Source of the DNA: Octopus bimaculoides
Lineage: Eukaryota
NCBI RefSeq assembly: GCF_001194135.2
Contig: NC_068986.1
Span: 30,869,068 to 30,933,067 of the forward strand
Direction of reading: 5' to 3'
DNA: 64,000 nucleotides
Of the stretch, positions 3,488-34,616 are shown one piece after another (position 1 is the first letter of the stretch; the number at the start of each line of letters is the position of its first letter). The notes below the pieces were generated by a model. The model ran no database searches. It was not told where the DNA came from and saw only the letters and a program-made list of their open reading frames with translations. Position numbers and translations under genes: made by a program.

Positions 3488-3592
3488 GTACAATACCACA
3501 TGGACTTTGAGAAAAACAAGGACAAGTACACAGTTGTAGCAGACAACCCTGATATGCAACGGTGTTTGATGGCTTCAAAGAATGCAAGTTTG
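3488..3592 (+). CDS. Lasp: Nebulin-repeat exon 1 (105 nt, phase 0-0): VQYHMDFEKNKDKYTVVADNPDMQRCLMASKNASL
   Basis: cttccag|GTACAA...AGTTTG|gtatga; open frame of exactly 35 codons with nebulin repeat pattern. Confidence 0.9.
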
Positions 3593-3724
3593 GTATGAGA
3601 TGCCTACCTATCTGTTCTTGATGCCCCAAGTTATTGTTTTGCATGGTTTAGAGTTTACTTACCATGGGAACAGACCAGTTCAGTTTTACCAAAGTGTGCA
3701 TACTGTTTACATGCACAAAATAAT

Positions 3725-3738
3725 GCTCTCTCTCGCTT

Positions 3739-3799
<61 letters not shown>

Positions 3800-3800
3800 G

Positions 3801-3833
<33 letters not shown>

Positions 3834-3837
3834 TTCT
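3725..3837. repeat. (CT)n microsatellite
   Basis: Direct reading; source of spurious RERE/LSLS ORFs. Confidence 0.95.
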
Positions 3838-4405
3838 CATGTTTGTTCAGTCTCTCCCTCACACACACCATACACTGAAAAATACAATTAATGAATGAGA
3901 AAACAAATTATCAAACAGACCTCTTCGAAATGTAAATTGATTTTCAACAAATGACTGTATAACCTAATGTCTTATATCATACATTTGTACAGTCTCTACT
4001 TCGGAAATTTGACATTGAAGTGGTTGCCTTTAACATCAACAGACCTTTTTGATTGTCCTAAGTTGACAAATTTGCTTACCAATGGAAACAACAGCTATCT
4101 TCTTGCTGAAAACTTCCAAAACTAAATTTACTCTTCAAGTTGCTGACATCAGCATCCACTTCATTCTCACTTTGTATACATAGGCTTTATTCAGACGTTT
4201 TTGATGGACCTTTCATGAACAATCATCTCCAAAACATCTCACAACTGGTGATAGAACAATTTAGTTTTATTCAAAACTCCACACACTGTATATCTGATCA
4301 TATTGAATACAGAGGTTACTAGTGCCTCAAACATTAGATTCTGAGACACCTAGTAACAATCTCTAATTACCTTTATGAGAATATTTCTCCTTGTCTTTCA
4401 TATTT

Positions 4406-4640
4406 GAGGTGGTGAATCAGCATAGGCTGTAAATTGGCAGTCATTTGAGTGTTGGATAAACCTACCTTGTGGTATTTGTTCTGACTCTGTAGGCTCTTAG
4501 TTCAAATCCTGCTGAGGTCAACTTTTCTTTAATCCTTTTGGAGTACCAATTCAAGATGGCGAAGTGGTGGAACAAGATGCCTTGCCATATTTGTTCTGGC
4601 TTTTTGCATTCTGAGTTCAAATCCCGCCATGGTCTACTTA
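4406..4640 (+). mobile_element. Two decayed heads of a tRNA-derived SINE (family C: GGTGGTGAGCTGGCAG...GAGTTCAAAT)
   Basis: B-box-like GTTCAAATCC twice; similar to copies at 9298, 29920 and 48892. Confidence 0.55.
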
Positions 4641-6599
4641 GGTAGTAGACTTAACCCATTTCCAGTTTAACACCACCACCTGGAACCTTGGCTTTAGCAG
4701 AGTCTATTCTGTTGCAAAGGTTCAAGCTAGGTCTTTGATTTGAAGATGCCTTCTCTCCACCAGTCTTGGAGACTGTATGGCCTTCTCTTCTGGCTAAAAA
4801 ACCCAAAAAAGTTTCTATGACTTTACAAAGTAAAGTTTTAAAAATATGCCCTTCATTCATATATTATTCAGACATTGTAATAGGTGGAATGGACACGGAC
4901 ACACACACACATGCACAAAACATCAGATATAAAGAAACAAGGCTAGTAAGCTTAATACTTTTTTTTGCGGTGGGGGTGGAGTTTAGTCAAGAGAAAAAGT
5001 CAGCACCCATGACTGGTAGGAGGAAGTTATCCTTGATTGGAGACCTGGACTCAACACTTGCCAAGAATGTATGCTAAAGGGAGCCAAGAAGTGATATTAA
5101 ACTGGGTGACAAATTAAGTTTATCACTCAACAGGAATGGTTTCTCCATCAGGATTTCACACAGTTTCCATGTAGCAAATTTCATTCACAAAGTTTGCCCA
5201 AAACTACATAGTTGCAAGTGAACTTCTTAATCCCACCATTATGTCCACACACATTTCACTTCAAGGCTTTGGTTAGTATGGGGCTATTGGTCCAACTCTG
5301 AGTTGTGTTTTTTCTCTTGTTTCTTAATATTTCCTTTACTATGGTTTCCATTCTGTTGAACATGTTGATTGTATATCAAATTCACCCCAAACATATTCAG
5401 TGCACAAGCTTCTGTTCTTTCTGTGACCCACACCGTTTCTTGCCTCCTAGACCCTGTTACTAAACATTTTTCCAGTTCTTTAGTATTACTCTCTACCCCT
5501 CTGGAACCCCTTTTCCATTCACATATTCTATCCATATACCCAACCTAGTTACCCTGGTTATGATCACTGCCACACCACCTCACACTAATAAATTAAAAAA
5601 AAAAGTTTTGTATAATTCTTGGTTAATTTTAAAGGTAAAATATTATGATGATAGTTGTTTAAAGCATTTCACAGTAGGTGTGACTGCAATAGTGTATTTT
5701 GTTAAAGTATATTTGGAATGTTGATAACTAACAATATGGAATGCTACAATATAGTGTGGAATTACATCACTTAAAGGTTTGGTTTTTGTGTGAATTTCTG
5801 CACTTGCAAATTTAATATAAACATTCCAACCAATGCCAACACGAAAAAAATATATATAAAAAAATATTAATAAATATAAAAAATGTGGTATGTAAAAGAA
5901 TATAGTTTTTGTAAAGAATAGCTTTTTTTCTTAATATACTGATTTTTAACTTCACCTTTGTTAAAGTAAGTTGAGTAGGTCTGTAAAATATATTTTATCA
6001 GTTCTTTGAAGCAATGCAGGAAAACTTTCATGTGGAAAGAAAACATAGAATTAGTTATTAACTGTCATTTAATGCCTAATGTAGTGTTAATGTCTGTTTT
6101 TTTCTTCTTCTCCTTTTTCTTAAGAAAATGTGTGAAATTACGAAAAATATTTTAGCTAAATCAGTAAAAAAAAATTATTAAAAAATAAAGAATTATATAC
6201 TTAACAGTAATGTATTATTAAAGCTTTTGCCCATTTTTACCCCAAACTCTTGATCTTGCCCAAACTTATATCTGTGACAAAAATATATTCTTATGTGAAA
6301 TCTTGTAAGAGCTTTCCTTGTTTATTGAAGTCAATTCTACCAAAAACTTCAACAGCTTTATTATGAACATAACATTCTTTTATTATTCTGTTTTATCTTT
6401 TTTTTATTCTATTAATACTGTTGAATTGTAAAAATCATCCAGTTATCTCCTTAACTAATTCTGTTAAAAAAGGGCTCGAATCATCTCTCATTTTAGATTT
6501 CTGTGTCTTACTTTTCTATCTTTGCACAAATAGTATATAAATATTGACTTGTCCTATATTCCTTCTAATACTTTGTGAAATTCTATCAATATCAGACAG

Positions 6600-6810
6600 A
6601 CATATGCATATATTGCATAGGAATGATGATATTGATGATAATGAAACATAGCTACCTGAATTGTATCAGGAAGAGAACTGACAAATTTATCCTCATCAGG
6701 AAATACATGGAAAGATTCCAAGGATCTGTAAATGCCAACAATATCTCATCAGAAATGTCTTATCAGCAATATTCTATGGAAAGCTTTGCACCACATTTGA
6801 ACTAGATTTA
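6600..6810 (+). pseudogene. Possible piggyBac-type transposase remnant
   Basis: Across frames reads ILHRNDD and RKRTDKFILIRKYMERF, reminiscent of the piggyBac LHFNDN...DKFxxIR segment; multiple stops, weak. Confidence 0.3.
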
Positions 6811-7339
6811 AACAGTCTTGCTTACCAATTGAAGATATCTTCTCTCTCCTTTATTTAGTACTTGTTTACCTTTTGCTTTTATATTGTTATATTTTATAAC
6901 TTTTTTAGCTTCTGAATTTTATTTTTAAATGCAATTACCCATTGGTGTCTGCATTTTGATGGGAGGAGGAGGAGACTCTCCCACTAATTTTTTTAATGTT
7001 TACTTTGCTCAGTGGGTTGGCAACGTTGATGGAATGTTAGATTGTAGGCTTTGTGATATTGAGATAAATACTTCTGTTCTGAATTGAATTATCCCTTCAT
7101 CTCTGACAATGTTGTTGTTGTTGGTTAGCCCAAGATCAGTGCTGATCAAGTAAGCCTATCATCAAAGGCATTCCAGCTATAACCAGCTTGTCTTTTTTTT
7201 TTTTTTTCTCTCTTCAAGATAATATAGTCTGAGTGTACCTCAGACTATATCATCAAATGTTTCCTTTTTAAGATGATAGGCTGAAGCTTCACAGATTTTG
7301 GCTGTTGTTTCAAGCAGGTTGAGTGACCATGCACTCCGT

Positions 7340-7704
7340 TGCTTACGACGTCGAGGGTTCCAGTTGATCTGATCAACGGAACAGCCTGCTCGTGAAATTA
7401 ACGTGCAAGTGGCTGAGCACTCCACAGACACGTGTACCCTTAACGTAGTTCTCAGGGATATACCGTGTGACACAGAGTGACAAAGCTGACCCTTTGAATT
7501 ACAGGCACAACAGAAACAGGAAGTAAGAGTGAGAGACAGTTGTGAAAGAGTACAGCAGGGTTCGCCAACATCCCCTGCCGGAGCCTTGTGGAGCTTTAGG
7601 TGTTTTCGCTCAATAAACACTCACAGCGCCCGGTCTGGGAATCGAAACCACGATCTTATGACCGCGAGTCTGCTGCCCTAACCACTGGACCATTGCGCCT
7701 CCAC
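7340..7704 (-). mobile_element. Near-complete, CpG-rich tRNA-derived SINE (family B), inserted into an older dispersed repeat
   Basis: Reverse complement begins GTGGAGGCGCAATGGTCCAGTGGTTAGGG (A box) ... GGTTTCGATTCCCAGACC (B box); related heads at 37840 and 59495. Confidence 0.8.
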
Positions 7705-8045
7705 ATTTAGGGACCTATAAGACTGATTTTAATGCAGTGTGTTCCTTCTTTTCCCAAGACCGCGGAGTATGATTTGAAGGGGGTTTGGCTTCCTCATTCA
7801 TTTCCTCAAATGAATGAATGATTTCATTTGGGAAACAGATGTTAGCTTAATGATGACAGTGGTTAAAAAATCTAGAACTCTCTAGGTTTCATTTGTTGTA
7901 ATTGGTACAATATGTACAAACAGTCTATTTTAGAGTGTTTGTATGTTTTGTTTTCCAATTCCATATTTATCTAACTTAGTTCTGAATTACTCTATTTGTG
8001 TTCCTTTTGGATCTGCATCAGATTTTCTAAAATTTACTTCCTTCA

Positions 8046-8102
8046 ACACACACACACATGCACACACACACACAATCACTCTCTCTCTCTCTCTCTCTCT
8101 CT

Positions 8103-8156
<54 letters not shown>
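8046..8156. repeat. (CA)n + (CT)n compound microsatellite
   Basis: Direct reading. Confidence 0.95.
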
Positions 8157-8159
<3 letters not shown>

Positions 8160-9297
8160 TGTCTGTCTTTCCATTTTAGCATAGGTGTGGAGGGGAGTAT
8201 AATTGAATATTTTGGTTGGTTATGGTCAGTTTAAATGTTACAGGGTTAAACAAAAGTCAAAGTTACAATATAGGAATACTCATATTATGGAAGCATTGTT
8301 TCTGAAAATCTTGCCATGATGCTGAATTCCATAATACAAAACCTATTTTCCAGTTGACTTGCAAAATGAAATCAGTGGGGAAACAAGTTATAGAATTCCA
8401 TATTGTATTAAGATTTTCAACAACACAAATACAGGAGATATCTGAATTCAGATTGCTTGCTGTTTTTTTTTTTAATTCTATTTAATAAATAGGTCTTTTA
8501 GCTTCGTAGTTGTCTCCCCCCCCCCCCATGCACACACATCAAGTTATATGTACATAGCCATTTCTGTGTGTTTGTTTGAGAAATCAGTTGTAAAAATTTC
8601 TATTTCTTGTGGGTAAAGAACTCAAAATGTATTATAGTTAGGGTTCTTTACTTTTCTTGAAGTAGCCAGAATTATATTCTCCATTCTTTTTTCTCTTTTC
8701 TCATACACACAAGCTCACAAATGCTTTTGCCTATTTGAAGGGATGGGTAGGCAGGTGGAGACAGTGACAGACTTTCACATTATGTCAAGAGGAAATAGCT
8801 GCCAGATTTTTGTTGACCTTATTAGATGTCATTGCGAACTCATTAGTAACTTTTGTTCTGCAGGATTTTGTAACTGGTTTCATTTACATATGCCTTATGT
8901 AAAACTATTTCAACTAGATAACTGGTATTGTTTCAACCCTTCCTGCTAATTAAGCAGTTTCAGTACATGTATGCTGTCTGAAACCTTGTGAAACAATGTT
9001 TTCTTTTTTTCTAAAATACACAAGCTTTCAATTTGAAACTTCAATTGGGTCATGTTCACGTTTTTTGCTATTTCTTATATAGAAGTAAAACTAGGTGATC
9101 TCTTCATTATTTTGCATTGAGTTAAGTTTACTTGGTGGTTATTTAGTTTTCCTTAACCATTTCACCAACAACATTATCATTTTATCAGATTGTTATTAAT
9201 GGAAGTAATGAGAACCAAGGCAATATAGTAAACTCTGCATAACTTGTAATGTTGTGTTTGGAAACTGAGTCTGTAAAGTATAATTCTTTCAATTATA

Positions 9298-9497
9298 GGC
9301 ACAATGCCTGAAATTTGTGGGTAGGAAACTAGTAGATAACATCAACATCAGTGCTTAACTGGTATTATTTTATCAATCCTGAAAGCATGAAAAGTGAAGT
9401 CAACTATGGCAGCGTTTTATCTCAGGACATACAACTGGAAAAACTGCTGCTAAGCATTTTGTCCAGCAGGGCTAATGATTCTGCCAGCTTACCACCA
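9298..9497 (-). mobile_element. SINE family C copy
   Basis: Reverse complement starts GGTGGTAAGCTGGCAGAATCATTAGC...AAAATGCTTAGCAGC, as in the copy at 48892. Confidence 0.7.
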
Positions 9498-10180: not shown

Positions 10181-11425
10181 TTGGGTCATCCCATAAATAA
10201 TGCCTTTTTTTTCATACTTCTTTTATTTTTCAAAATTAAGATAATCACAGTTCTTTTTTAATCTAAAATATACCCTCTTTCATTTTCTACAATATTTTTC
10301 CATCTGTCTGGTAGACTTGTAAGGACCCTCTTCCAAAATTTCCTTGTCCGTGATGAAAAATACTCCTCCAGTACTGTTCTGACCTCATCTGCGGAATCAA
10401 TGATAATCAGATGGGGCAATGTCTGGTGAATATGGTGGGTGGGGCATTGTTTCCTCTTCAAAGTGCTCCAACTTTTGGAATGTCGTCCACACTGTATGTG
10501 GCCGAGCATTATTCTGATAGAACACCTTTTGTCTTGAAACCAAATATGATCGTTTTTTTTCTTTCTTTCTAGCACTGGCTTAAGCTGCTCACAGTAGATC
10601 TCCTTTGTTATTGATTGGTTTGTGCTTAAAAGTTCAAAGTGGACTAAACCTTTCATATCCCACCAAACAGATAACAACACCTTATGTGGGTGAAGCCCTT
10701 CTTTAGCCTGGGGTGCTGGTGTTTCTTCTTTCCCTACCCACTGTCTTTGGCACTTGACTTTTTTTATAGAGAACCCATTTCTCATCACCAGTTGCTATTC
10801 AGTTAAAAAAAGCTTCATTCGTGAGACATGACAGCAAAGAATAGCACACATTCACTCTCTGTGTGTGATTAGACTCAGAAAGTTTGTGAGGAACCCATTG
10901 ACCCAATTTGCTGACTTTTCCAATGGCACGCAAGTGTTGATGAATAGTTGAATGACCAAATCCAAGCTTCTCTGCTAGTTTCTCAACAGTTATGATTGGA
11001 TTTTGTTATACCAAGGTTTGCAGGACATCCTCATCAAGCTCTACAGATCTTTCAGGACAACGCTTATCTTCTAGGTTGTAGTTTCTGGCTCAGAATTTCT
11101 GAAACCACTGTTGATACTGTCTTACACTTATTGTCCAGTCCCTGTATATTGCATTAATATTCCTCACACTTACTGTTGCATTGTTGCCTTTATTGAATTC
11201 ATAAAGCAAAATATGCTGAACATGCACCTTTGTCATTTCCATTATAGCTTTGAGAAAATAACTTTTAAAATCAAACTGCACTCTTCAAAACTTGCACTGA
11301 AAATAAGTACAAGGTAAAATTACTGCTTGTTTTTATAACAAGTTGATGCAGGTAGTTTATCCCGTCTCTCTCTGAATTTTAATTCATGCAATTGAAAAAA
11401 CTGCATTATTTATGGGATGACCCAA
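10181..11425 (-). mobile_element. Full-length but pseudogenised mariner (Tc1/mariner) DNA transposon
   Basis: Perfect 23-bp TIRs TTGGGTCATCCCATAAATAATGC flanked by TA on both sides; transposase pieces HILLYEFNKGNNA...WFQKF, LGQWVPHKL, LLSVWWDMKG, PPYSPDIAPSDY with frameshifts and a deletion. Confidence 0.95.
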
Positions 11426-11617
11426 TATTTAACTGCATTTGTTAGTAACCTCAATATCTGCTGACTTCTTTTCACCATTAAAATTTATTTTGTAAATGCC
11501 ATGCTATATTTCAAAATCTCTAATTGCCACCACCAACAACAACTATAAGCACATTCAAGTCTTAGCCATATCTTTACAAAAGAAAATACAATATGAATGT
11601 TTAACTTGAAGCATTAA

Positions 11618-19892: not shown

Positions 19893-19997
19893 GTCAACTA
19901 CCACAGTGACTTTGAAAAACAAAAGGGTACTTACACTGCTGTAGCTGAACCTATTGAATTGAAACAACATTTGGAAAACACAAAGAACATGAGTTTG
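19893..19997 (+). CDS. Lasp: Nebulin-repeat exon 2 (105 nt): VNYHSDFEKQKGTYTAVAEPIELKQHLENTKNMSL
   Basis: cttgattag|GTCAAC...AGTTTG|gtataa; 35 codons, no stop. Confidence 0.9.
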
Positions 19998-20403: not shown

Positions 20404-20508
20404 GTAAACTACCACAGTGATTTTGAGAAACAGAAGGGTTCCTATACTGCTGTTGCAGAACCTATGGATGTAAAGCGACACTTGGAAAACACAAAAAACA
20501 TCAGTCTG
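20404..20508 (+). CDS. Lasp: Nebulin-repeat exon 3 (105 nt): VNYHSDFEKQKGSYTAVAEPMDVKRHLENTKNISL
   Basis: ccattaacag|GTAAAC...AGTCTG|gtatat; 35 codons. Confidence 0.9.
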
Positions 20509-21430: not shown

Positions 21431-21535
21431 GTAAACTACCACAGTGATTTTGAGAAACAGAAAGGTTGCTATACAATGGTTGCAGAACCTATGGATATAA
21501 AACAACATTTGGAAAACACCAAAAATATCAGTCTG
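21431..21535 (+). CDS. Lasp: Nebulin-repeat exon 4 (105 nt): VNYHSDFEKQKGCYTMVAEPMDIKQHLENTKNISL
   Basis: ccattgatag|GTAAAC...AGTCTG|gtatat; 35 codons. Confidence 0.9.
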
Positions 21536-23209
21536 GTATATTTAGTTGTGATGCATGGAAGGGTTGTTTGTTGCCATTTGGTGTTGACTAGTTTTCTGAA
21601 ATCCATTGATTCTGCTGCACAACAAATAATGAAAATATTAATCCCTTTTTTTTTTTTTTTTTTGGGGTGATATTTTTTTTATTGTGAAATTAATAAGAGC
21701 ATTATATATTTGACATGATTGTAGCATATTTAGTTTCAACTTTTAATATTTGGATAATATTCTTGAGTTTGGCTCCATTAGTAACAAAGATTTATATTCC
21801 TCATGTGATGTTAGGTGATGTAGAGTCAATTTTAAGAATATAAGGTTCTATCAAGACACAATGGAAATTTTAGAAAAACCATTTTCAATATTTTTTTTTT
21901 TTTGTAACACTTCATTTCAAAAATATTTTACTCTTAAAAATAGTGTTTGTTTTCTGACCCCAGTTTTTTTAAAAATCATAAGTGTGCCTGTTTCTGTTTT
22001 CTACTCTAAATTAACTAATATTTTTGAAAAATAGCTAGTCATCAGTGTTCATTTATTTTTAATAGTGTAAAATCTGAAAATTTTTCTCACTTGTTGGAAA
22101 AAAAAAAANNNNNNNNNNTTAAGGGCCGATTTTGAGTTGCTAAGTCATATTAAAAAACAAGTGAAAGAGAATTTAATTATAGATATTTAATACTTCATCT
22201 ATGATAAACAATAGTGTGATGTTTTGTAATTAGGGAGGGATCCATAAACAGGTGCCTTCAACACTATATACTACAATGAATTATGATGTTCTGATTTTTT
22301 TGAAAGATCTTAACATGGAGTTTGCATGCCAGGAATTGAAACTGGGAATCAAAATCACTTCTGTGGTGCTTACCTTTTATTTTATAGAAATATTTTCATT
22401 TTCAGTCACCACTTTTCATAATCTTTGAGCAATTTCTTTTGCATACCAACATTTTATAAGAATATTGCTATAAATTAACTCATAGCTCAACATGTTTTAA
22501 ACATTGTTATTTTACATTATCTATTGATGATGTTAGATGCTTTTCTCAGTATCATCTTATTTTTGTTTATATTATGCATATTACTGAAGAAGTGAATATA
22601 ATTTTAGGATGATATTGTACTAGTGCTTTAGGCCAGTTTGATTGAGCAAACCATGTCAATTGTTTCTTTTTTCATATATAGTATATCTGAAACCACATTA
22701 TTTAATGTGTTCTTTCTTTGACAGTAGGGCATGATTTGAGTGAGATTTAGCTGCTATTTTTAACATGTCAGGCAATCCTGTAGGCTCAAGTTGTAGTCAA
22801 GTATATCGACTGTGTTGACTCAATTATTGCTCCAATATATTGATTATGTGGGTGTAGGACAATGTAGTTATAGGTTGTATTTTGACCAGGAATTACACTT
22901 GTATTTATCCACAGGAACTGAATAATGTCCTAAAGTTGGACATAGGAAATGATTAGTGTTCCAAGATTAATGTAATAAATAAAATATTTATTCTCTTAAC
23001 TGCACAGAACCATAATTAGGAACTCCAGACAACTATGAAATCTATGATTATCTGTTTTTCTGTAAAGTTTTGTCTTACATTAGTTTTACTAATCTCACTA
23101 AATGTAGAAATAGGTTTTCTTTCCCCCTTTTTTTAATAACTTATTTCTAAAAAAATTTCTTCTTACAAATAAATGCACAACCTACTTACATGTGTGTATG
23201 TATGAATAT

Positions 23210-23247
<38 letters not shown>

Positions 23248-23357
23248 GTACATGCTTATACACACATGTATATACATATAAACAAATATATATACATGTA
23301 TACACACAAATGTATATTTTCATATACACGTATGTATATGCATTTATATATAGTAGT

Positions 23358-23867
23358 NNNNNNNNNNNNNNNNNNNNNNNNNNNNNNNNNNNNNNNNNNN
23401 NNNNNNNNNNNNNNNNNNNNNNNNNNNNNNNNNNNNNNNNNNNNNNNNNNNNNNNNNNNNNNNNNNNNNNNNNNNNNNNNNNNNNNNNNNNNNNNNNNNN
23501 NNNNNNNNNNNNNNNNNNNNNNNNNNNNNNNNNNNNNNNNNNNNNNNNNNNNNNNNNNNNNNNNNNNNNNNNNNNNNNNNNNNNNNNNNNNNNNNNNNNN
23601 NNNNNNNNNNNNNNNNNNNNNNNNNNNNNNNNNNNNNNNNNNNNNNNNNNNNNNNNNNNNNNNNNNNNNNNNNNNNNNNNNNNNNNNNNNNNNNNNNNNN
23701 NNNNNNNNNNNNNNNNNNNNNNNNNNNNNNNNNNNNNNNNNNNNNNNNNNNNNNNNNNNNNNNNNNNNNNNNNNNNNNNNNNNNNNNNNNNNNNNNNNNN
23801 NNNNNNNNNNNNNNNNNNNNNNNNNNNNNNNNNNNNNNNNNNNNNNNNNNNNNNNNNNNNNNNNNNN
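23358..23867. other. Assembly gap (N run) inside the repeat-exon array
   Basis: 510 N. Confidence 0.98.
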
Positions 23868-24169
23868 TGTAGAACATCTGTCGTGTTTAGAAAAGATGTG
23901 AGTTCAAGTCCCACAGGCAGCCTATGACTTTTTCCATCCCAAGGTTTTTTTTAAACCCAATATTTTACACTTTACTATTTATAACTTTATTTACTTCGAA
24001 TTCAAATATCAAAAACATATATATATATATAGTAATTAGAAATGATTTTGTTTGATGCTCTCTACATGTAAATTTTAGAAATGCTTCTTAATCAGATTAG
24101 CAATGTTTCTCTCTTCCTTTCTTAATGATGATGATGATAATTTATTTGCTGTGAAATTACCTATGACAG

Positions 24170-24274
24170 ATTCAGTACCACAGTGATTTCGAAAAGCAGA
24201 AAGGTAACGTCACACCCGTTGCTGACACTTTGGAAATGAAGCGTCATACAGAAAATGCAAAGAACATTAGTTTG
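24170..24274 (+). CDS. Lasp: Nebulin-repeat exon 5 (105 nt): IQYHSDFEKQKGNVTPVADTLEMKRHTENAKNISL
   Basis: ctatgacag|ATTCAG...AGTTTG|gtacaa; 35 codons. Confidence 0.9.
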
Positions 24275-25659
24275 GTACAAATTATATATTTGTATAGCAT
24301 GAAATTATCAATTGCCTGTTGGCATTACAATTTTGTGCTACTAACCATCTTCTCCACCCAGTTTTTATCCCTTACCCTTGATCACTTTACTGTTGTTTAC
24401 AATGATTGACTTCGCCTTCAATCAATACAGCATGTCTTGTTGAAAAGGCACACACTGAGTATTTGTGTTATTTGTAACTCACTTTGATACTCAACCAGCT
24501 TTTGCTCCACCACTTCTTCTTATATCACTTCCTTTTATTTAGCTAATCTAGTTTTAGTTTGTGAAACTAGATATACTATTGATACATATACATACTTAGA
24601 GGTAAGTATAATTGTAATAAAACTCCTTCAAATCCTTCAATATCTAGTAACATTTAAGTGTTAAAAGAATTTATTATTTTGGTGTGTGTTGTTTTTCTTA
24701 AAGTATTAAACATGTTCAATATTTTATCACTTTAGCATGTATTAAAGTTCCTATTTCCAGTTTAATATAACCATCCGTGTTTGTTGTTTCTAATAATATT
24801 TGGTATCTACATGCAATTTGGTCAGTTTTTTAACAGAAGAATGAAATGCTGATTTTTCCATTTTAGCCACTTCTATTCATCTACTCTTTTATTCATTCTA
24901 CAACTGAAGCTAGTCAGTGAAATCAGACTAGGCTTTTATTTTTTCTGGTTACTGAAACCAGTACAGTTTTATGATACAGTTCTATTGAACCAATTGTATG
25001 GGTTTCTAGTGTGTGTGTATCTCCATTATTCTCTCTTTCATGTCTGTGGACAATATTTGATACCTAGCTTTTGGCTAGATCTCTTTATACAATGTTTTAG
25101 ATGAAATGTTTTCTATAGTGCTACATGACAAAACCCAGATTGTAAGAAGTAGATGCAGGTTTGTCTATTGATATTTATCCTTCAGTCAGTATATTTACTG
25201 TAAATTGTTACACTAGTGAATGCATAGAAAATAAAGGGATATTTGAATTGTTCATTGGATTCTTCTTGTCTGAGCATGTAACTATGTCGTTTGAGCATAG
25301 CCTATTGTATATGAGACTATATCTATCTCTGTAGAGATTAGCTACAGAGATTTCAGATAACCTCTAATTTGATATTGTTAATGAGCTATAATGTCTGAAA
25401 CCTTTACAGCCATTATATATATATATATGTGATTTTTATTCTAATAAATATTCTACCTTTTATCTCATACCAAATACCTGCTGTTTGCATATATGTGTGA
25501 GTGCACACCTATTTTTGCACATATGAATTATAAGAAATGATATGAAATTCACTTGATATAAATTTTTTTTTTATACAGAAAGTTTTTAAAATAATGTACA
25601 TTGAATGTATATTTATAAATATATATGCACACTCAAACACATATGCTGTTTTTTCCCCC

Positions 25660-25972
25660 NNNNNNNNNNNNNNNNNNNNNNNNNNNNNNNNNNNNNNNNN
25701 NNNNNNNNNNNNNNNNNNNNNNNNNNNNNNNNNNNNNNNNNNNNNNNNNNNNNNNNNNNNNNNNNNNNNNNNNNNNNNNNNNNNNNNNNNNNNNNNNNNN
25801 NNNNNNNNNNNNNNNNNNNNNNNNNNNNNNNNNNNNNNNNNNNNNNNNNNNNNNNNNNNNNNNNNNNNNNNNNNNNNNNNNNNNNNNNNNNNNNNNNNNN
25901 NNNNNNNNNNNNNNNNNNNNNNNNNNNNNNNNNNNNNNNNNNNNNNNNNNNNNNNNNNNNNNNNNNNNNNNN
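25660..25972. other. Assembly gap (N run) inside the repeat-exon array
   Basis: 313 N. Confidence 0.98.
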
Positions 25973-26134: not shown

Positions 26135-26137
<3 letters not shown>

Positions 26138-26204: not shown

Positions 26205-26312
26205 ATGCATTATCGAAGTGATTTTACTAAACTGAAAGGGACAGCCACTCAAGTGACTGTGGAGTCTCTTGAAATGAAAAGACATGCTGAAAATGCCAAG
26301 AACCTCAGTGCG
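26205..26312 (+). CDS. Lasp: Nebulin-repeat exon 6 (108 nt): MHYRSDFTKLKGTATQVTVESLEMKRHAENAKNLSA
   Basis: aacattcacag|ATGCAT...AGTGCG|gtacta; 36 codons, most divergent repeat. Confidence 0.85.
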
Positions 26313-26659: not shown

Positions 26660-26751
26660 GTCTCTATAGATTGCTGGTAGGATTGGCTGCACAGTTCATT
26701 GTTTACTGAGTCTCTATAGATTGCTGGTAAGATTGACTGTATAATTCATTG
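26660..26751. repeat. Two-copy direct repeat, period 50 nt
   Basis: GTCTCTATAGATTGCTGGTAGGATTGGCTG / GTCTCTATAGATTGCTGGTAAGATTGACTG. Confidence 0.85.
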
Positions 26752-29168
26752 AAGCCCTTTCATTATCAGAATGGGTCAGTTAACTGCTGTAATCTTTGAT
26801 TGTTCACATGGCGAGACTCTATCAAGAGATTCATAGTTCATTTCCATTTGAATGCATTTCTTCAATCTAACTATAGTCATTTAGTGAAGACATGAATAAG
26901 TTTTCAATGTCATTCCTGTCCAGTATTAACTACTTTATCGTTTGAAGCATCAGTCATTTTTTCTAATTGAAAATTTTCCTCCCACGGAATATTTTTGTAG
27001 GATGTTTGTGTGTGGATATATAGCATTATAAAGGCTTTACAAAAGCATAGCCTTTACTTACAATGTGGTGAGTTATAGTCAAGTAGGCCAATTTGATCTA
27101 GGCAAATGTGGATAAACAGCCATTTACATACATATTGATGAAACTCTAAACTCTCTTTAAAACAAGGAAAACATTGACTTATGTGTTAAAAAAAGAAAGA
27201 ACTGAAGCATCTGAATATTTTTAGTACTGATGTTAAACTTATCTTCTAACCGGAGGAAAGTAAATGTACCATTACTACAATTTCATTTACTAAGCTGATA
27301 TCAGTCTAGCTTTGTTGCTATGGTATCAAAGGAGGCTGAACTGCTATAAAAATTTTGGAATTTCGAGAGATGGAGATGCTCTTAGTACAGTTCTTGTAAT
27401 CATCTAATGAAGTATTTTTTTGAAAAATAGCTTATCAAGACAAGTTTTAAATGTTGTAGACTAAAAAAGATCAATTTGAATTTTATCAAGTAAATATCAT
27501 TTGTAACCTTTTCAAAAGGCTTTCACTTTATTACATTACTATATGGTGTACTTAACTTAGTATCCCCTGAAATCTAGTGTATTTTTCCCCCTTTAAGCTC
27601 ATTTTTCAAACATAACCAAAGTTTTATGTGATAAAACGAATCTGCAGAAAACACTTAGGTTGCCGTGTTAAAAAATGTTTGAAATCTATTTTAGCATCAA
27701 TTAGAAACTGCAGCAACTGAGCTGGACATCTATCCACCTAGAATCATGTTCTATTTGTAGAAATTGGTCTTAAAACAGCAGCTTCACATGTCTCAATGTT
27801 TAGTTTAACTTCTGTTTTTTTGACTGGTTTAGCTTTTTTCCAACATTTGTTTTTACTTTTTAGTTTTATTTATTGTACACATCCTTAATTTTAGCATTTG
27901 ATGATTGGTATCATCTGTGAAAATAGGCAGACTCTAACATATTTGATTGTTTTAAAAGTTATTACCTGTTGGTCTCAATTTAATGAGGTACATACAGTTA
28001 TTAGAATGTTCAAAGATCTATCACCAGTAGACAAATTGACAGTATTAGAGTACCTTCCTACCATCTTGAATGCAGATACTTGAGTTTTGTTTAATTGCTA
28101 AATTAATAGTTGTTTGTTCTTTATTTTGTTGCTGTGTGAGCTTATACTAGAATTTAAACAAAAATTTTTAATCTCTTTTCTCAATCTCTGCATGACTGTG
28201 TTGTGCTGGGAAGCAAATTACACTTAAGTCCACTATCAAACAACCAACTCGTTTCATAGAAGAGAACAGAGTATAATAATGTGTGGTAGTAAATGATTTC
28301 AATCTGGGATAGAAGTTCGTTAATTTCCAGAGGATATTAGGAATATACATGAACTGTTAAACCAAAGCCTTCAAAAATTAGATCCATTCAACAGTTAGTA
28401 ATAATTTTTTTTATATTAGGCCTTAGAATTCTAGAGGGGAGCAAGTGAAATATATTTCAAGCGCATTAGCTACGTATTTGAAATGATTCCAAATAGAAAT
28501 CCAATCTAGGATGTGCTCTTGATTCATCAAGTCTCCTGTATCACATTAAAATGGTCACTCCCCACCACATAGAGAGTAGCTGTTTTCAACAACCACTAGT
28601 ATTAGCAACAATAAATAACACCTGGAAAATTTTCAGGTAGAAAAATTCCCATGGCTAAAGTGTTAAATGGTAAGTTGTTGTTGATTTGTTATCCCAGAGT
28701 TGCTTGATTCCTTAAATGTTTTAAAAGCTTTTGCAAACTTTGAATGTTTGGTTGAAGTATTACCAGTGCTAGCAGAGATCTGCACTTATTTCCTTGCAGT
28801 TGCAAAACTCATGTCATTTGCACAATAACCAAACAAATGCACTATTTATATTAAATTTCTTTATATAATTAAAATATTTTTGTATGAAAGTTTTCGTTAC
28901 AAATACAAATATATTAATATATGTTTTTAAAAATAAAAACTAATTTTCTTTTTAAAAAAATTCCACTTAAAGAATGTAATTTTAACGGATCAGAATTTCC
29001 TTATACAGAGTTTTACAATTTTTTATAAAATGAAAAATAAATACAAAAGCAAACGTGCTCATTAAAAAAAAAAGAAAAAAAAGAAAACCTTGTAATTTCA
29101 AAATTAAAGTTGCCTAAATGTTTTGAATCTTGGGATAGGGTTAAAGTTAAATTTATTGACTTCTGCAG

Positions 29169-29276
29169 ATTCAGTATCACAGTGACTTTGAAAAGCAGAA
29201 AGGGTCTGCAGCGAAATTGACAGCAGATTCTATGGAGATGAAGAGACATCTGGAAAATGCCAAGAATGCCAGCATG
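29169..29276 (+). CDS. Lasp: Nebulin-repeat exon 7 (108 nt): IQYHSDFEKQKGSAAKLTADSMEMKRHLENAKNASM
   Basis: gacttctgcag|ATTCAG...AGCATG|gtactg; 36 codons. Confidence 0.9.
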
Positions 29277-29828
29277 GTACTGAGTGTTGTCTTGCTCACT
29301 CAGCTTCATTACTGTCCATTCATCATCATTTCCATCTTAATTTAGCATACATACAACAGGAGCTAAGTTTAGACTTCTAATTTTCAAATATAGTAATTTA
29401 GCCCTTCTCATTTTGAAGTTTGATTTGTTTTTTTCCCCCCCTTTCAAAGTGTCTTCTTGCATAATTTATTTTTATTTTAGGAATAATTTTCTTCAAAACC
29501 AAAAGGGATTATCTAATAATTTTATGATCTTATTTAATGCTACTTGGATTATTTTAAATCTTTTATAACTTGATTCTTAGGTTCATGATTTCATAAAAAA
29601 ATTGACCATGTGATTGAGAAGTTGTGACTTTGTAGTTGTGACCCCCCTCCTCTCTCCATTGTGTGATACTTTGAGCAAAGTATCTTCTATTACGATCAGA
29701 ACCATATGAAGTAAGTTTGGTAGTGAAAAACTGTGAAGCCTACTAGGTTACTGTGTGTGCATGCAAGATGGTCAAAATTAGTACATCAAATGAAAATACT
29801 TCACGATATTAGTTCCACCCTGTTAGAA

Positions 29829-29900
29829 ACCACTTAGCTTAATAGTACAGAGCACTCAGCTGGTATCTGAGAGGTGACAGGGTTTGATTCTCTATAGCCA
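29829..29900 (+). pseudogene. tRNA-like remnant (SINE head or tRNA pseudogene), anticodon loop CTGGTAT
   Basis: TAGCTTAATAG...AGAGCA, anticodon stem CTCAG/CTGAG with 7-nt loop, GGTTTGATTC T-loop; acceptor stem degraded. Confidence 0.35.
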
Positions 29901-29919
29901 CCTGCTGGCAACTTTTTAA

Positions 29920-30112
29920 GACACTGAGCTGGCAAAATGCTTAGTGGTATTTTGGCCATTTTCACATTTTGAGTTTAAATTCTGTAGATGTCAGTTTTGC
30001 CTTTCATTCTTTCAGGGTTGATAAAATAAGTACCAGTTGAGCACTGGGGTTGAGTAATTGACTATCTCCATCCCCTAAAACTTAAGGCATTGTGCCTATA
30101 GTAGAAAGGAAT
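29920..30112 (+). mobile_element. SINE family C copy
   Basis: GAGCTGGCAAAATGCTTAGTGG...GATAAAATAAGTACCAGTTGAGCACTGGGG...TTGTGCC. Confidence 0.7.
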
Positions 30113-31655
30113 ATTAGTTCCTCTCAAGTTATGCCCCTTCGTGCCAAGGTCAGTTTGTCTTTTGATTCTCTCCAAGGTCAGTAAAAATAAGCATCAGATA
30201 AAATATTGGAAACTAAAACCCTTGAAAGTGGTACCATAGTACAACTGCAGTTCAGTAACCAAAACTAATAATAAAAAAAATTAACAGCTCCTGTTGTTAG
30301 ATTACATGTTCATTTTTTTTGTTTTAGTCATCATTCTTTTGTAAAAACTCTGATGAAAATTAAAAAAAAAAATATAGCAATAAAAAAGAAAGAAAAAATA
30401 AGTTAGTGGGAAACCAATTTCTTCTAGATTTCATTCCTTATTATATTATAGGACCAATAATGTATTGGAAAAGCTAAACTCAATGGCTGCAAACAATGTC
30501 TGGTTTCATTTAAGATCATTAGATTGTCACTAAGTATGTTTTAAGAGCTGAAACTGACATTGACCGTAATAATCTGGAGTCAGTTATGACCTCAAGGTCA
30601 GCATCTCCATGACATAACTGATGAGGTTTTCTACTTAAGTGAAACCTTTTGACAGTAAAGGGAGAGAGATGAGAATCTTATATTATGCAAGTGGTAATAG
30701 CTATCCAAGTGATAGTAATACACATCAGACATGTATGTATACAAGTATAGTGCTAATATCCATGTATTTTGTATATTTATGGAAAAGGAGGGTAGGTGGG
30801 AGACAACTAGGTATCTGCCAGTTGATGAGCAATATTGTTTTTTTTTCTCTTTGTTCCTTAGTGGCAGTTCATATCTTGGTTTATTTTATGTACATATTTA
30901 TTCTGAGTGGGCCAATCCATCAATTTGCCATTTTTGTACTAGAAAGAAGATTCTACTTCAAGGATATATATAATTTGCAGACACAAATGCAGCCAGTTGA
31001 AAGCTCCGCCTATTGGATACTGGTAGCACTTTGTATTTGATATGATATGATGTGTCTTGCTATGTTTTAAAATTCAGGCTTCCCTTTTTAAATAGTATTT
31101 TAAATAATCACTCTTGTTATTTTTGTTCCTTATTAAGATGGTTTTGTTTCCTTTAGTGTAAAACAGTATGTGGCTTTGACTCCAAAGAGTTAATCCTATT
31201 TTAACTATTTCATTTGATTAATCTCTGTGATTAAATAGACAGGTATTTATTTTAATGTTCAGATTTAGAAGCATTATCTTTGTTCAATTTAAAGTCGCTT
31301 TAGACTATATTTAATTTAATTGAATTAATATCTATTTCAAAAGAATTACATTTTCTATTAAGATGAAGTCGTTTTAAGAAAACCATCACATATTTTTGAT
31401 GAAGAGTATCTTGATTGCCATTTATGTATTGTGGTTGGTGGGGGATATTTCCCAGTTCTCATTAAAAATCTGTTGGGTATCGTCTACTTGTAAGCCAGTC
31501 AGCTATATATCTCCAGTGTTTATGTATCTCAAATTATAACTACAGTTTTTAAGAATAACTGGATCATTGTTCTATTCTCTCATTTCAAGAAGTTTATTAG
31601 TAGTTTTATAAACTTGAAAGTGTTAAATTAATTACTTACTTCAGTATGGGATTAA

Positions 31656-31874
31656 CCCTTTTGTTACCATATTTCTGTTGAGATGCTCCGTGTTTCTTTC
31701 AATTAATTTTAAATATAACAAAGAATTTAGTAAAATAACTTAGTTATTAAGCTAGTGTCAGGAACATAAACTGGGACTAAGGTTTGGTGGAAGATTTTAA
31801 TTCAAAACTTTTGAAAACAAGACATTTGTACTATAGAGCCAGTGGCGGTTTCAGGCGGGTTGGTATCAAAAGGG
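31656..31874. mobile_element. TTAA-flanked MITE (family 1), intact ends
   Basis: TTAA|CCCTTTTGTTACCA...TGGTATCAAAAGGG|TTAA; 13/14 TIR match; piggyBac-type target site. Confidence 0.85.
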
Positions 31875-32334
31875 TTAATTTCAGAAACCACATTGCTTCT
31901 CCGCCACCAAATAATTAATAGAATGCCGGTGTTGTTTAGATAAGCTCTTGTATGTTGTAAGTCCAAATCCTGTCTGGATTGATTTTTACCTGTCACTCTT
32001 CTAAGGTCAGTGAAATAAAAATTCATTTGATTAAATTTAAAGACACCTTCAAATTTGGGGTTTGTGCTGATGTTAGAAATGAGTGTTATTGTTTCGATGG
32101 AGGAAAAAGGGTGTCATCTAAGACCATTGCAGAACCTTCCCTAGCCTGCTGGGGGTTGGCATGGGTAAGTTTTGGCTTGAATTTCTGTTATCTGGAGATG
32201 AGTGAAGGATTTTTAGGTATGAGACAGTAGGGATGATAAGAGGGGTAAAGGCGTCTACTTGAGGTAGATTTGAGGAGTGGTAATATGGAGAATGTTAGTT
32301 CAGAGAAGTAGAGGTCATTGTAGTAGTAGATAGT

Positions 32335-32560
32335 TATCTCTGTATGTCATGAGGCCTCACCAGAATCTCTCGAACCAGCTCTGTTTTCTGCCATTGTTCT
32401 GGTCTCATTCCAGCTTCTTCACCCTGTTTGTCTCCTTTCTTTGTCAGTAGTCCTTTGCCATGTGGTTTTAGGGCACCCTGTTGCTCTTTTTTTCCACAGG
32501 ATATCACTTTGGTGCCACCATACAATCACTTTCTTTATCTTGTCTGAGGACATGTCTAAC
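32335..32560 (-). mobile_element. LINE (RTE-like) C-terminal remnant
   Basis: Minus strand KKRATGCPKTTWQRTTDKERRQTG*RSWNETRTMAENR resembles the GRPKTTWRRT...DRxxW end of RTE ORFs. Confidence 0.6.
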
Positions 32561-34441
32561 CTAGTTCCAGTGTATGTATGATAGGTAAACAGTTCTAGTT
32601 TACTGCCAGTCAATCAGATTACCTTTAAGGTGGGGTATGGCCCTGTATATATTGTAGCATCATCATCTTGCAGATAGGAGCAATGAGTCTTTGCTAATCT
32701 GCCAACTACTGGATATCATATTTTTTCCTAATTATTGAAATATTTCTGACTTTATAGTGGTTCAATTCTTGAATCCTACTGATTTTTATTTATAAAGGTG
32801 CTGAATTAATGTTTGAGTTTGGAGTCTGTAGCAAGGCTAAGCTTATGACTTTATTTGTGCTCATTCAGCACTCATTCAATCCAACCATTTGTGAGGTACA
32901 AATAACTTTAGACTCTAAAGCTACCATAAAGAAACAACAACAGCATACAAACAAACCATTCTTGGTACAAGACTTTAACAATAAATGAAAATCAAGAACA
33001 TTTTCATGGAGATCTAATTTGTCCAACATCGAGGTAAAATGGAAAATACACAGCTGGTGGTATTATAAACTAATGACTCGGTAAAGATGCTTAGTAATGA
33101 AATTTCTAATCTTATCAGAAAAGAATGACATAGCAGTTACTATTTTTATATATCTTAATTTCTTGAGAGCTGGGATTTTATTTTTGTGGCTGAATTTTTG
33201 CAGATGGGAAGTCAAACTGCAAATTCAAGCTGATTCAATTTTCCATTAGAAATTTTAGAAGAAAGTAAACTTGTGTTTGTGGTTAGTTGAATATGATGTA
33301 TAGTAACAAATTTTATTGAAATAAATTGCAGCATCTTAGATAATTGGTCTTCTGGTTTATATTAAGTTTAAAACTTGAATTTGTAGTGAGTTAATTTTTG
33401 TTGGTTGTTTTTTCTTATGGTTATTATTAATATTTATTGACATTATCTGATTACTAGACAAGTGTAAAATGGGGTCTTAGAACCAAACATATACATTAGC
33501 TTTACTTAATTCAGTTCATTTTTAGTAATATATTTATTGGGATTAGATTCAAGTGTTGTTAATTAGTCCACGGTCAGCTCTGATCAAGTAGAACTACAAT
33601 CAAAAATATTCCAACTGTGACTTGTTTATGTGTGTATATATCTATATATATATATATTTATCTCCAGAATTACATTGTTCCATATATCCTATTCTTAATA
33701 TTCTAGGGTGATATTTAAGGGAATTTAGCTGCTATTACTTGCAGGTTGAATGACTCGTAGTGCTTACCTCATTGGCTCATAGATTCTAGTGTAGAGACAT
33801 TTTATATTGTTTTCATAATGTAATAAATTGAAATTTTTGTTACAGGTATTCCTGAAGAACTCTAGTTAAAATAATTCTTTTAATGACTCTGCCTATCTGC
33901 ATATCTCATTGCAAATCCTGTCAGTTTTATTTGATACTCCACTTAGACAGAGGCATTGCTGTGTGGCTAAGAGTAGGTTCTGTCCCACTCTGCAACATCT
34001 TGGGCTGGTACCTTCTTCAGTTGCCTTGGGCTGGCCAATCTCTTATGAGTGAATTTCACTGATGGAAACTATTGATTCCATTGTGTGTGAAAGAGAGTGT
34101 TGATATTGACATTTCTTGTTGACACTATTATCCATTACTTTATGCTTTTAAAGACCTGTGGAGTATAAAAATCCCTTACCCCAAAATAGGTGAGGGTTGG
34201 TGACAGGAAGAGCATCTGGTTGTAAAATCCTGTGTTAAGAGCGAGTCGTGTCGAGGTCATGTTAGCATGGAAAAATGGACACTAAAATTGAACAAGCCAT
34301 GTAATCAGTTTAAATCTTTATTACAGGTATTCCTGAACTTTCATAGCTGAAGTAACTCTATCACCAATTCTGCCCATCTACATAGCTTTATTGTAAACCA
34401 TATTCTGTATTTTATTGAGTACTTCCTTATTTACCTTTCAG

Positions 34442-34616
34442 ATTAAATATCATGAAGATTTTGAGAAATCGAAAGGAAAATTCATCACCATTGCTGATGA
34501 TCCAGAATTGCAACGCATCAAGCAGAATACTCAGATTCAGAGTGAGATCAGCTATAAGGGTATCAAACAAACCCGGGATTTTATGGAACAACGACGACCA
34601 GATCAAGCTGCTCAGG
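34442..34616 (+). CDS. Lasp: Canonical Lasp-type repeat exon plus start of linker (175 nt, phase 0-1): IKYHEDFEKSKGKFITIADDPELQRIKQNTQIQSEISYKGIKQTRDFMEQRRPDQAAQ
   Basis: ttacctttcag|ATTAAA...CAGG|gtaaca; lies in ORF 34415..34678; resembles the Lasp repeat KYHEEFEK...VADTPELQRIK. Confidence 0.92.

What the first reader, a model, noticed from the sequence alone, without database searches (positions are those of the whole stretch)
3488..34616. Lasp gene expanded into a modular mini-nebulin by one-repeat-per-exon tandem duplication
Seen: seven phase-0 exons of 105/108 nt, each one nebulin repeat, ahead of the canonical Lasp repeat exon, giving at least 8 repeat units in the window. Established: vertebrate LASP1 and Drosophila Lasp have 2 repeats and LASP2 has 3, while long arrays are characteristic of chordate nebulin/nebulette. 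Inference: a cephalopod lineage independently built a nebulin-like actin-binding array whose length can be set by cassette splicing, possibly a tunable thin-filament ruler or scaffold in muscle. The ORF track hides it because most exons are under 60 codons.
Basis: partly seen in the sequence, partly recalled or inferred. Interest (0 to 1): 0.85.

Follow-up and report, generated by a model that had tools for sequence, protein, structure and literature searches.

The report
Octopus Lasp gene with eight nebulin-repeat exons
This is the middle of the octopus Lasp gene, whose actin-binding repeats are each coded by one small exon; the gene is already annotated, oysters, mussels, scallops and snails share the design, so it is a real but fairly ordinary feature that the literature seems not to have described.

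Summary
The + strand carries seven AG..GT, phase-0 exons of 105 or 108 nt, followed by the 175-nt canonical Lasp exon. Each codes one 35/36-aa nebulin repeat (Pfam PF00880 E=8e-51, 8 stretches). A six-frame profile scan finds exactly these 8 units (E<=2.4e-20; next best 0.79).

Spliced with five downstream linker exons, they reproduce residues 84-520 of RefSeq XP_052824630.1, [quoted passage not shown], at 100%. So the gene is already annotated. The three assembly gaps lie in introns that this model splices across in frame.

- The array is not a cephalopod invention. Oysters, mussels, scallops, a pearl oyster and Gigantopelta have 5-6 units, and Patella has at least 9. An oyster locus shows the same 105-nt phase-0 cassettes in the same intron slot.
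- Only E2-E4 look like an octopod-lineage duplication, and an old one.
- Annotated isoform models use 11 cassette combinations (2 to 8 units), so length-by-splicing is plausible, but the window itself cannot show it.
- Nine units span about 50 nm, so a thin-filament ruler is unlikely. A variable-footprint actin scaffold like a mini-nebulette fits better.

I found no paper describing multi-repeat mollusc Lasp.

The parts
3488..3592 (+). E1, cassette exon, 105 nt, phase 0-0, one nebulin unit (VQYHMDFEKNKDKYTVVADNPDMQRCLMASKNASL)
   Evidence: AG/GT ends. Profile E=3.6e-23. Residues 84-118 of XP_052824630.1. Best cross-species match is the first extra unit of Gigantopelta and oysters, 60-63%.
19893..19997 (+). 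E2, cassette exon, 105 nt, phase 0-0, one nebulin unit
   Evidence: 83% aa identity to both E3 and E4. dN/dS to E3 is 0.05.
20404..20508 (+). E3, cassette exon, 105 nt, phase 0-0, one nebulin unit
   Evidence: 89% aa and 88.7% nt identity to E4. The DNA match stops about 15-22 nt beyond the exon.
21431..21535 (+). E4, cassette exon, 105 nt, phase 0-0, one nebulin unit
   Evidence: Skipped in O. sinensis X9 and X20 models.
24170..24274 (+). E5, cassette exon, 105 nt, phase 0-0, one nebulin unit
   Evidence: 86% identical to the first extra unit of the cuttlefish-like transcript, dN/dS 0.07.
26205..26312 (+). E6, cassette exon, 108 nt, phase 0-0, one nebulin unit (MHYRSDFTKLKG...). Left out of the main RefSeq isoforms.
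   Evidence: Used in O. sinensis X28 and Argonauta X8 as LIM-E6-E7-E8, and in the old O. bimaculoides fragment model as E4-E5-E6.
29169..29276 (+). E7, cassette exon, 108 nt, phase 0-0, one nebulin unit
   Evidence: 72% identical to the third extra unit of the cuttlefish-like transcript.
34442..34616 (+). E8, constitutive canonical Lasp repeat exon, 175 nt, starts in phase 0 and ends in phase 1. Holds a full unit plus the start of the linker.
   Evidence: Present in every isoform model that reaches the 3' part of the gene; the one model without it is the truncated fragment P0008. The oyster homologue has the same length and phases.
39661..39867 (+). Linker exon A (DGLPPPPP...DSRIGQ), 207 nt, phase 1-1, alternatively used
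   Evidence: tblastn E=5.7e-41. AG/GT ends and exact fit to XP_052824630.1.
42784..42819 (+). Linker micro-exon B (VDKSKNTSAAKT), 36 nt, phase 1-1
44316..44363 (+). Linker micro-exon C (VEKVAKSKESSKSSKK), 48 nt, phase 1-1
56228..56341 (+). Linker exon D (VENGSSRRIGSIADYDP...), 114 nt, phase 1-1
   Evidence: tblastn E=6e-22
61361..61398 (+). Exon just before the SH3 domain (APAHPQNPYAGKG). The RefSeq X1 model reads through its donor to a stop at 61461.
   Evidence: The SH3 body is not found in 61399-64000.
22109..25972 (.). Stretch holding the three assembly gaps (22109-22118, 23358-23867, 25660-25972). All are intronic. E5 lies between the second and the third.

Best explanation
The window is about 61 kb from the middle of the roughly 153-kb Lasp gene of Octopus bimaculoides. 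In Drosophila Lasp is the only nebulin-family gene; whether that holds for molluscs was not tested here.

Architecture. An ancient phase-0 intron separates the LIM-adjacent nebulin unit from the canonical second unit. In this gene that intron holds seven cassette exons, and each codes exactly one 35/36-aa nebulin repeat. Every cassette is phase 0-0 and a multiple of 3 nt. Each ends in ..S-x and starts x-x-Y-H, so any combination stays in frame and rebuilds the SxxxY(H/K) actin-contact motif at each junction. Splicing can therefore yield LIM-(2 to 9 units)-linker-SH3 proteins.

Origin. The cassette design is shared with bivalves and gastropods and so predates cephalopods. E5-E7 predate the octopus-cuttlefish split. 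E2-E4 are an old tandem exon duplication in the octopod lineage, and each copy has been kept under purifying selection.

Inferred function. Each unit binds one actin subunit, as in nebulin. Isoforms would then differ in footprint (about 11 to 50 nm) and in avidity on actin filaments. The LIM and SH3 ends would tie the protein to Z-disc, dense-body or adhesion partners. That makes it a short, nebulette-like stabiliser and scaffold, not a ruler for the whole filament.

Shown here: exons, phases, family, identity with the RefSeq protein, spread across molluscs, selection. Inferred: actual cassette usage in tissues, actin stoichiometry, cellular role.
For: - Exon map and splice sites.
- Pfam Nebulin E=8.1e-51 with 8 stretches.
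- Exactly 8 profile hits, all far from noise.
- 100% match of the spliced window exons to residues 84-520 of XP_052824630.1. The gene range is 153 kb and the product carries LIM and Nebulin hits.
- O. sinensis orthologue has LIM (E=2.4e-12), 8 Nebulin stretches and SH3 (E=2.9e-13).
- 11 cassette combinations among 35 octopod isoform models.
- Intronless RNA-derived contig from SRR9970006 with LIM, 5 units and SH3.
- My unit counter returns 2 for LASP1-type and 3 for LASP2-type proteins, as published. It returns 5-6 for oysters, mussels, scallops, Pinctada and Gigantopelta, and 9 for Patella.
- The Ostrea locus has four 105-nt AG..GT phase-0 cassettes and a 174(+1)-nt last exon.
- The same intron slot exists in Capitella and in fish LASP1, and the fish's middle unit is a 108-nt phase 0-0 exon.
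- Paralogue dN/dS is 0.05-0.14, with most changes at third codon positions, and the introns no longer align.
- Literature: 1:1 nebulin-repeat:actin binding through SDxxYK, and nebulette confined to the I-Z-I region (PMC9140763). Two-repeat Drosophila Lasp acts at the Z-disc and the A-band (PMC4137052).
Against: - No RNA data for this species were available here. Cassette use rests on RefSeq and other annotation models, plus one transcript contig from another cephalopod.
- The LIM exons and the SH3 exon are not in the window. The O. bimaculoides X1 model even ends without SH3, by read-through.
- Most O. sinensis models (21 of 35 octopod models) carry the same E1-E5,E7,E8 set. Repeat number may therefore vary less in vivo than the exon design allows; most modelled diversity lies in the linker exons.
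- No model joins all 7 cassettes, so the 9-unit form is hypothetical.
- Actin binding by these units was not tested, and a PDB sequence search gave no hit.
Confidence: 0.82

Rival explanations
1. One reading: a cephalopod lineage built the array on its own, as a lineage-specific novelty.
For: Octopods have the most LIM-linked units seen here (8 in one model, 9 coded), and E2-E4 are 83-89% identical to each other. The literature states that invertebrate Lasp has 2 repeats (PMC4137052, PMC3305314).
Against: Bivalves and gastropods have 5-9 units. The oyster locus has the same cassette structure in the same intron. E1 pairs best with the first extra unit of Gigantopelta and oysters, and E5-E7 pair with cuttlefish-like units.
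Confidence: 0.05
2. The array is a tunable thin-filament ruler that sets filament length, as nebulin is thought to do.
For: Same repeat family. Drosophila Lasp loss shortens thin filaments by about 12% (PMC4137052, PMC9140763). Invertebrate sarcomere lengths vary widely (PMC11285827).
Against: At most 9 units. At one actin subunit per unit (about 5.5 nm, established for nebulin, PMC9140763) that spans about 50 nm, far below micrometre-scale filaments. There is no seven-unit super-repeat pattern. No tropomodulin-end region was seen.
Confidence: 0.05
3. The cassettes are decaying or non-functional duplicate exons that gene predictors include by homology. The real protein is the 2-unit Lasp.
For: Four O. 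vulgaris models are plain 2-unit Lasp. No expression data for this species were seen here.
Against: All 7 cassettes keep open frames, AG/GT sites and phase. dN/dS is 0.05-0.40 against paralogues or cuttlefish-like orthologues, while the introns have diverged beyond alignment. Identity to O. sinensis is 92-100% at the protein level. A transcript contig carries three such units.
Confidence: 0.03
4. The multi-cassette Lasp locus is ancestral to bilaterians and homologous to the vertebrate NEBL locus (LASP2 plus nebulette), not a mollusc-side expansion.
For: The phase-0 slot and the single-unit 105/108-nt exon in the same register occur in fish LASP1, an annelid and molluscs. LIM-less models named 'nebulette' exist in Patella. 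A nemertean isoform has 3 units.
Against: Capitella and Strigamia models have 2 units, and Drosophila is reported to have 2 (PMC4137052). Units of 35 aa are too short for a firm tree. Extra mollusc units resemble each other more than they resemble vertebrate units.
Confidence: 0.12

Closest known systems
Drosophila Lasp / C. elegans F42H10.3 (invertebrate LASP class)
   Same: Same gene family and order of parts: LIM, nebulin units, a linker with two ..S(I/D)xDYDP motifs, SH3. RefSeq names the octopus gene after them. The first and last units are the canonical pair.
   Different: Those proteins are described with 2 nebulin repeats (PMC4137052, PMC3305314). The octopus gene codes 9 units, and up to 8 are joined in one model.
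Vertebrate NEBL locus: LASP2 (LIM-nebulette, 3 repeats) and nebulette (over 20 repeats, no LIM)
   Same: One gene gives products with different numbers of nebulin repeats and a shared SH3 end. The products are short relative to the filament and, for nebulette, sit near the Z-disc. LIM-less models also exist in O. vulgaris and Patella.
   Different: In NEBL the long and short forms use different promoters and exon blocks. Here the models vary by cassette skipping within one LIM-to-SH3 transcript. The array is much shorter (at most 9 units). Orthology of the extra units is unproven.
Nebulin (NEB)
   Same: 35-aa repeat with the SxxxY(K/H) motif, and many single-repeat exons of about 105 nt (the latter from my own knowledge, not tested here).
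   Different: Nebulin has about 185 repeats in seven-unit super-repeats that span the whole thin filament, and no LIM. None of that holds here.
Bivalve and gastropod Lasp models (Ostrea edulis XP_048780657.2, Mytilus, Pecten 'nebulin-like', Gigantopelta, Patella 'nebulette')
   Same: Same slot, same 105-nt phase-0 cassettes, same last repeat exon (shown for the Ostrea locus), 5-9 units.
   Different: Octopods have three further copies (E2-E4) and two 108-nt cassettes.

Membership tests
Nebulin repeat (Pfam PF00880) | Profile match above the curated cut-off | tested here: met
   169 bits against a cut-off of 20.1, E=8.1e-51, 8 stretches
Nebulin repeat (Pfam PF00880) | About 35-aa period with an SxxxY(K) motif | tested here: met
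   Units are 35 or 36 aa. Every junction reads S-x | x-x-Y-H/R, for example ..NMSL|VNYH. H or R replaces K, as in canonical Lasp (IKYH).
LASP class (LIM and SH3 protein) | N-terminal LIM domain in the same product | tested here: met
   Not in the window. XP_052824630.1, whose residues 84-520 the window encodes exactly, carries a LIM hit. The O. sinensis orthologue has LIM at E=2.4e-12.
LASP class (LIM and SH3 protein) | C-terminal SH3 domain in the same product | tested here: inconclusive
   The SH3 body is absent from 61399-64000, and the O. bimaculoides X1 model ends by read-through. O. sinensis, O. vulgaris and Argonauta orthologues and the cuttlefish-like transcript do have SH3. The gap at 62948-63227 or sequence beyond the window may hold it.
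LASP class (LIM and SH3 protein) | Two (LASP1, invertebrate Lasp) or three (LASP2) nebulin repeats, as described in the literature | tested here: not met
   8 units in the main models and 9 coded. The same counter gives 2 and 3 for LASP1-type and LASP2-type proteins.
Nebulette / nebulin | Long array (over 20 units in nebulette, about 185 in nebulin) with seven-unit super-repeats in nebulin | tested here: not met
   Only 8 units in the window. The identity matrix shows a local E2-E4 cluster and no periodicity.
Nebulette / nebulin | No LIM domain; separate N-terminal region | tested here: inconclusive
   Main models start with LIM. One O. vulgaris model (P0006) and the Patella models lack LIM, but they may be truncated predictions.
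Alternatively spliced cassette array | Transcripts that differ in cassette content in this species | not testable with these tools
   Only annotation models and one foreign transcript contig. No read-level data.

The most novel reading that the evidence does not exclude
Molluscs use cassette splicing of Lasp to make a graded series of 2- to 9-unit actin-binding proteins that differ between muscle types or tissues. That would be a protostome counterpart of the LASP2/nebulette pair. It would have arisen by repeated duplication of an ancestral single-repeat exon that also seeded the chordate nebulin family, with a separate expansion in ctenophores.
Probability: 0.3. Interest if true: 0.5.

Novelty: new variant of a known kind. 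Interest (0 to 1): 0.3.

Why it matters
Reviews and the key functional paper treat invertebrate Lasp as a two-repeat protein, the minimal ancestor of the nebulin family. The mollusc genes show that the family's single-repeat exon has also been multiplied outside chordates, giving 5 to 9 units, apparently with splice-selectable length.

That offers a small natural series for asking how the number of nebulin repeats changes actin binding, Z-disc or dense-body architecture and filament stability. It also adds a data point on how nebulin-type arrays arise.

The gene itself is not a discovery, since it is in RefSeq. The cephalopod-specific story is wrong.

Tried and rejected
Neither was found; only the short exon before SH3 turned up.
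- Pfam per-stretch counts under-count the divergent bivalve and gastropod units. I therefore built a 35-aa unit profile and checked it on LASP1-type (2 units) and LASP2-type (3 units) proteins.
- Tried to fetch gap-free octopus loci. O. sinensis X21, O. vulgaris P0002 and P0006 and Ostrea X7 were not on record. The O. bimaculoides gene range of 153 kb was too long for DNA to be returned. The gap check therefore rests on protein models.
- Looked for recent segmental duplication around E2-E4. DNA similarity ends about 20 nt outside the exons, so the duplication is old.
- A PDB sequence search with the array gave no hit.
- One literature query was badly framed and returned nothing useful. Seven further searches found no paper on multi-repeat mollusc Lasp or only incidental mentions.
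- I did not predict a structure, because isolated nebulin repeats are not expected to give an informative model.


Full report
**What is in the sequence**

The window is AT-rich animal DNA with six runs of N. tblastn with the two repeat peptides visible in the ORF list found eight collinear + strand matches. Reading their borders gave eight exons, each with an AG acceptor and a GT donor:
- E1 3488-3592, E2 19893-19997, E3 20404-20508, E4 21431-21535 and E5 24170-24274, each 105 nt.
- E6 26205-26312 and E7 29169-29276, each 108 nt.
- E8 34442-34616, 175 nt.

E1-E7 are phase 0 at both ends. E8 starts in phase 0 and ends in phase 1. The spliced 305 aa match Pfam Nebulin at E=8.1e-51 in 8 stretches. 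A profile of the units run over all 2846 six-frame fragments finds only these eight, at E 8.7e-26 to 2.4e-20; the next best hit is 0.79.

**The gaps**

Gaps 22109-22118 and 23358-23867 lie in the E4-E5 intron. Gap 25660-25972 lies in the E5-E6 intron. No exon touches a gap, so frame across the gaps is not an issue. The only open question is whether a gap hides another cassette. The RefSeq model for the same species joins E4 to E5 and E5 to E7. None of the 35 octopod isoform models holds a unit type other than E1-E8. A hidden exon is therefore not indicated. I could not read a gap-free assembly to exclude it.

**Which gene**

The array retrieves LIM-nebulin-SH3 proteins of Octopus sinensis, O. 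vulgaris and Argonauta, and a 99%-identical O. bimaculoides fragment. A later cluster look-up listed XP_052824630.1, [quoted passage not shown].

I spliced E1-E5, E7 and E8 with five further exons that I mapped downstream:
- 39661-39867
- 42784-42819
- 44316-44363
- 56228-56341
- 61361-61398, plus read-through to a stop at 61461

The product equals residues 84-520 of that protein at 100%. Residues 1-83 hold the LIM domain and the first nebulin unit, and they lie upstream of the window. The gene spans 153 kb on GCA_001194135.2. The SH3 body is not in 61399-64000. The X1 model itself lacks it, whereas O. sinensis orthologues have LIM, 8 Nebulin stretches and SH3.

**Is it cephalopod-specific?**

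No. I counted units with a 35-aa profile. It returns the published 2 for LASP1-type proteins and 3 for LASP2-type proteins. The counts were:

| Taxon | Units |
|---|---|
| O. sinensis main isoforms | 8 |
| Cuttlefish-like transcript | 5 |
| Ostrea edulis | 6 |
| Crassostrea, Mytilus, Pinctada, Argopecten, Pecten ('nebulin-like'), Gigantopelta | 5 |
| Patella vulgata and P. caerulea ('nebulette', no LIM) | 9 |
| Nemertean isoform | 3 |

In the Ostrea locus the four extra units are each a 105-nt AG..GT phase-0 exon. They sit between the LIM-adjacent unit and a 174(+1)-nt last repeat exon, exactly as in octopus.

The same phase-0 slot exists in Capitella and in a fish LASP1. The fish's middle unit is a 108-nt phase 0-0 exon in the same register.

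**What is octopod-specific**

Unit comparisons:
- E5, E6 and E7 pair with the three extra units of the cuttlefish-like transcript (86, 67 and 72%).
- E1 pairs with the first extra unit of Gigantopelta and oysters (60-63%).
- E2, E3 and E4 are 83-89% identical to each other.

E2-E4 are thus a tandem exon duplication in the octopod lineage. It is not recent. O. sinensis has one-to-one orthologues of each copy. Synonymous divergence between copies ranges from 0.47 to saturation. DNA similarity ends about 20 nt outside the exons. dN/dS of 0.05-0.14 between copies, and 0.05-0.40 against the cuttlefish-like orthologues, shows that every cassette is held as coding sequence.

**Splicing**

All cassettes are symmetric phase-0 exons. 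Each ends ..S-x and begins x-x-Y-H/R, so any combination keeps the frame and rebuilds the SxxxY(H/K) motif at the junction. Among 35 octopod models there are 11 cassette combinations, ranging from E8 alone to E1-E5,E7,E8. E6 appears only as LIM-E6-E7-E8 or E4-E5-E6, and no model joins all seven.

Twenty-one models share the full E1-E5,E7,E8 set and differ only in linker exons. The models therefore suggest more variation in the linker than in the array. These are predictions. The only direct transcript I could inspect is an intronless 1339-nt contig from SRR9970006 with LIM, 5 units and SH3.

**How it most likely works**

In nebulin, each repeat binds one actin subunit through the SDxxYK motif. 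Nebulette, with about 23 repeats, stays in the I-Z-I region (PMC9140763). Two-repeat Drosophila Lasp binds actin, alpha-actinin and myosin and tunes thin-filament length and spacing (PMC4137052).

By inference, the octopus isoforms would cover 2 to 9 actin subunits, roughly 11 to 50 nm. Avidity would rise with length, and the LIM and SH3 ends would anchor the protein to Z-line, dense-body or adhesion partners. That is a scaffold or stabiliser of variable footprint. A ruler for micrometre-long filaments is not compatible with the length.

**Comparison and novelty**

The gene is a member of the LASP class by domain order and sequence, but it fails the literature's 'two or three repeats' description. 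It resembles the vertebrate NEBL locus in giving products of different repeat number. It is not a nebulette or nebulin by length, super-repeats or absence of LIM.

I found no paper on multi-repeat mollusc Lasp. Koch et al. and Fernandes & Schock describe non-vertebrate Lasp with two repeats. The feature is thus annotated but apparently undescribed: a new variant of a known kind, of modest interest.

**Other expansions seen**

The exhaustive profile search found long arrays outside molluscs only in chordates: nebulin, nebulette, NRAP, amphioxus C3ZH63 and the tunicate Clavelina. It also found a small group that a follow-up search tied to the ctenophore Mnemiopsis LASP-class protein, with about 4-5 units.

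Noticed in passing
window 10258-11281, - strand (intron between E1 and E2): Remnant of a mariner/Mos1-type transposon. ORF 10258-10788 matches Transposase_1 (PF01359, E=3.6e-21) and ORF 11090-11281 matches the Mos1 HTH domain (PF17906, E=1.1e-15). The reading frame is broken into separate pieces.
   Followed up: partly
window 61361-61461 and gap 62948-63227: The RefSeq X1 model of O. bimaculoides reads through the donor at 61398 to a stop at 61461 and so lacks SH3. No SH3-coding sequence is found up to 64000. The exon may lie in the 280-letter gap or beyond the window.
   Followed up: partly
proteins P0348 (Mnemiopsis leidyi ML038835b), P0346, P0345; locus L003 (SRR25005450) 121-1164: Ctenophore LASP-class proteins show about 4-5 nebulin-like units after the LIM domain. 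This is more than the two repeats reported for Mnemiopsis in PMC3305314, and no SH3 is evident in these models.
   Followed up: partly
proteins P0103, P0030 (Patella vulgata 'nebulette' X10, X11) and P0204 (Patella caerulea): Limpet models with 9 or more units, an SH3 end and no LIM. They are the longest mollusc arrays seen and could be LIM-less, nebulette-like isoforms in a gastropod. Longer isoforms X1-X9 were not seen.
   Followed up: partly
locus L006 18278-18385 (fish Aplochiton LASP1) and L005 4383 (Capitella Lasp): The phase-0 intron just before the x-x-Y-H/K start of the second unit is shared by a fish, an annelid and molluscs. In the fish the middle unit is a 108-nt phase 0-0 exon, the same module as the octopus cassettes.
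   Followed up: yes
window exon junctions E1-E8: The SxxxY(H/R) motif straddles every exon junction. Each exon ends ..S-x and the next starts x-x-Y-H, so the motif is restored whichever cassettes are joined.
   Followed up: yes
window 39661-39867 and 56228-56341: The two larger linker exons are weak paralogues of each other. Both carry G-S-I-x-D-Y-D-P followed by a ..Y-D motif (tblastn E=0.001-0.002). All four linker exons are phase 1-1, so they too can be skipped freely.
   Followed up: no
window 3700-3870, 8058-8160, 23190-23357: Long dinucleotide microsatellites: (CT/GA)n in intron 1 and (CA/TG)n directly next to the 510-letter gap. The latter probably explains that assembly gap.
   Followed up: no
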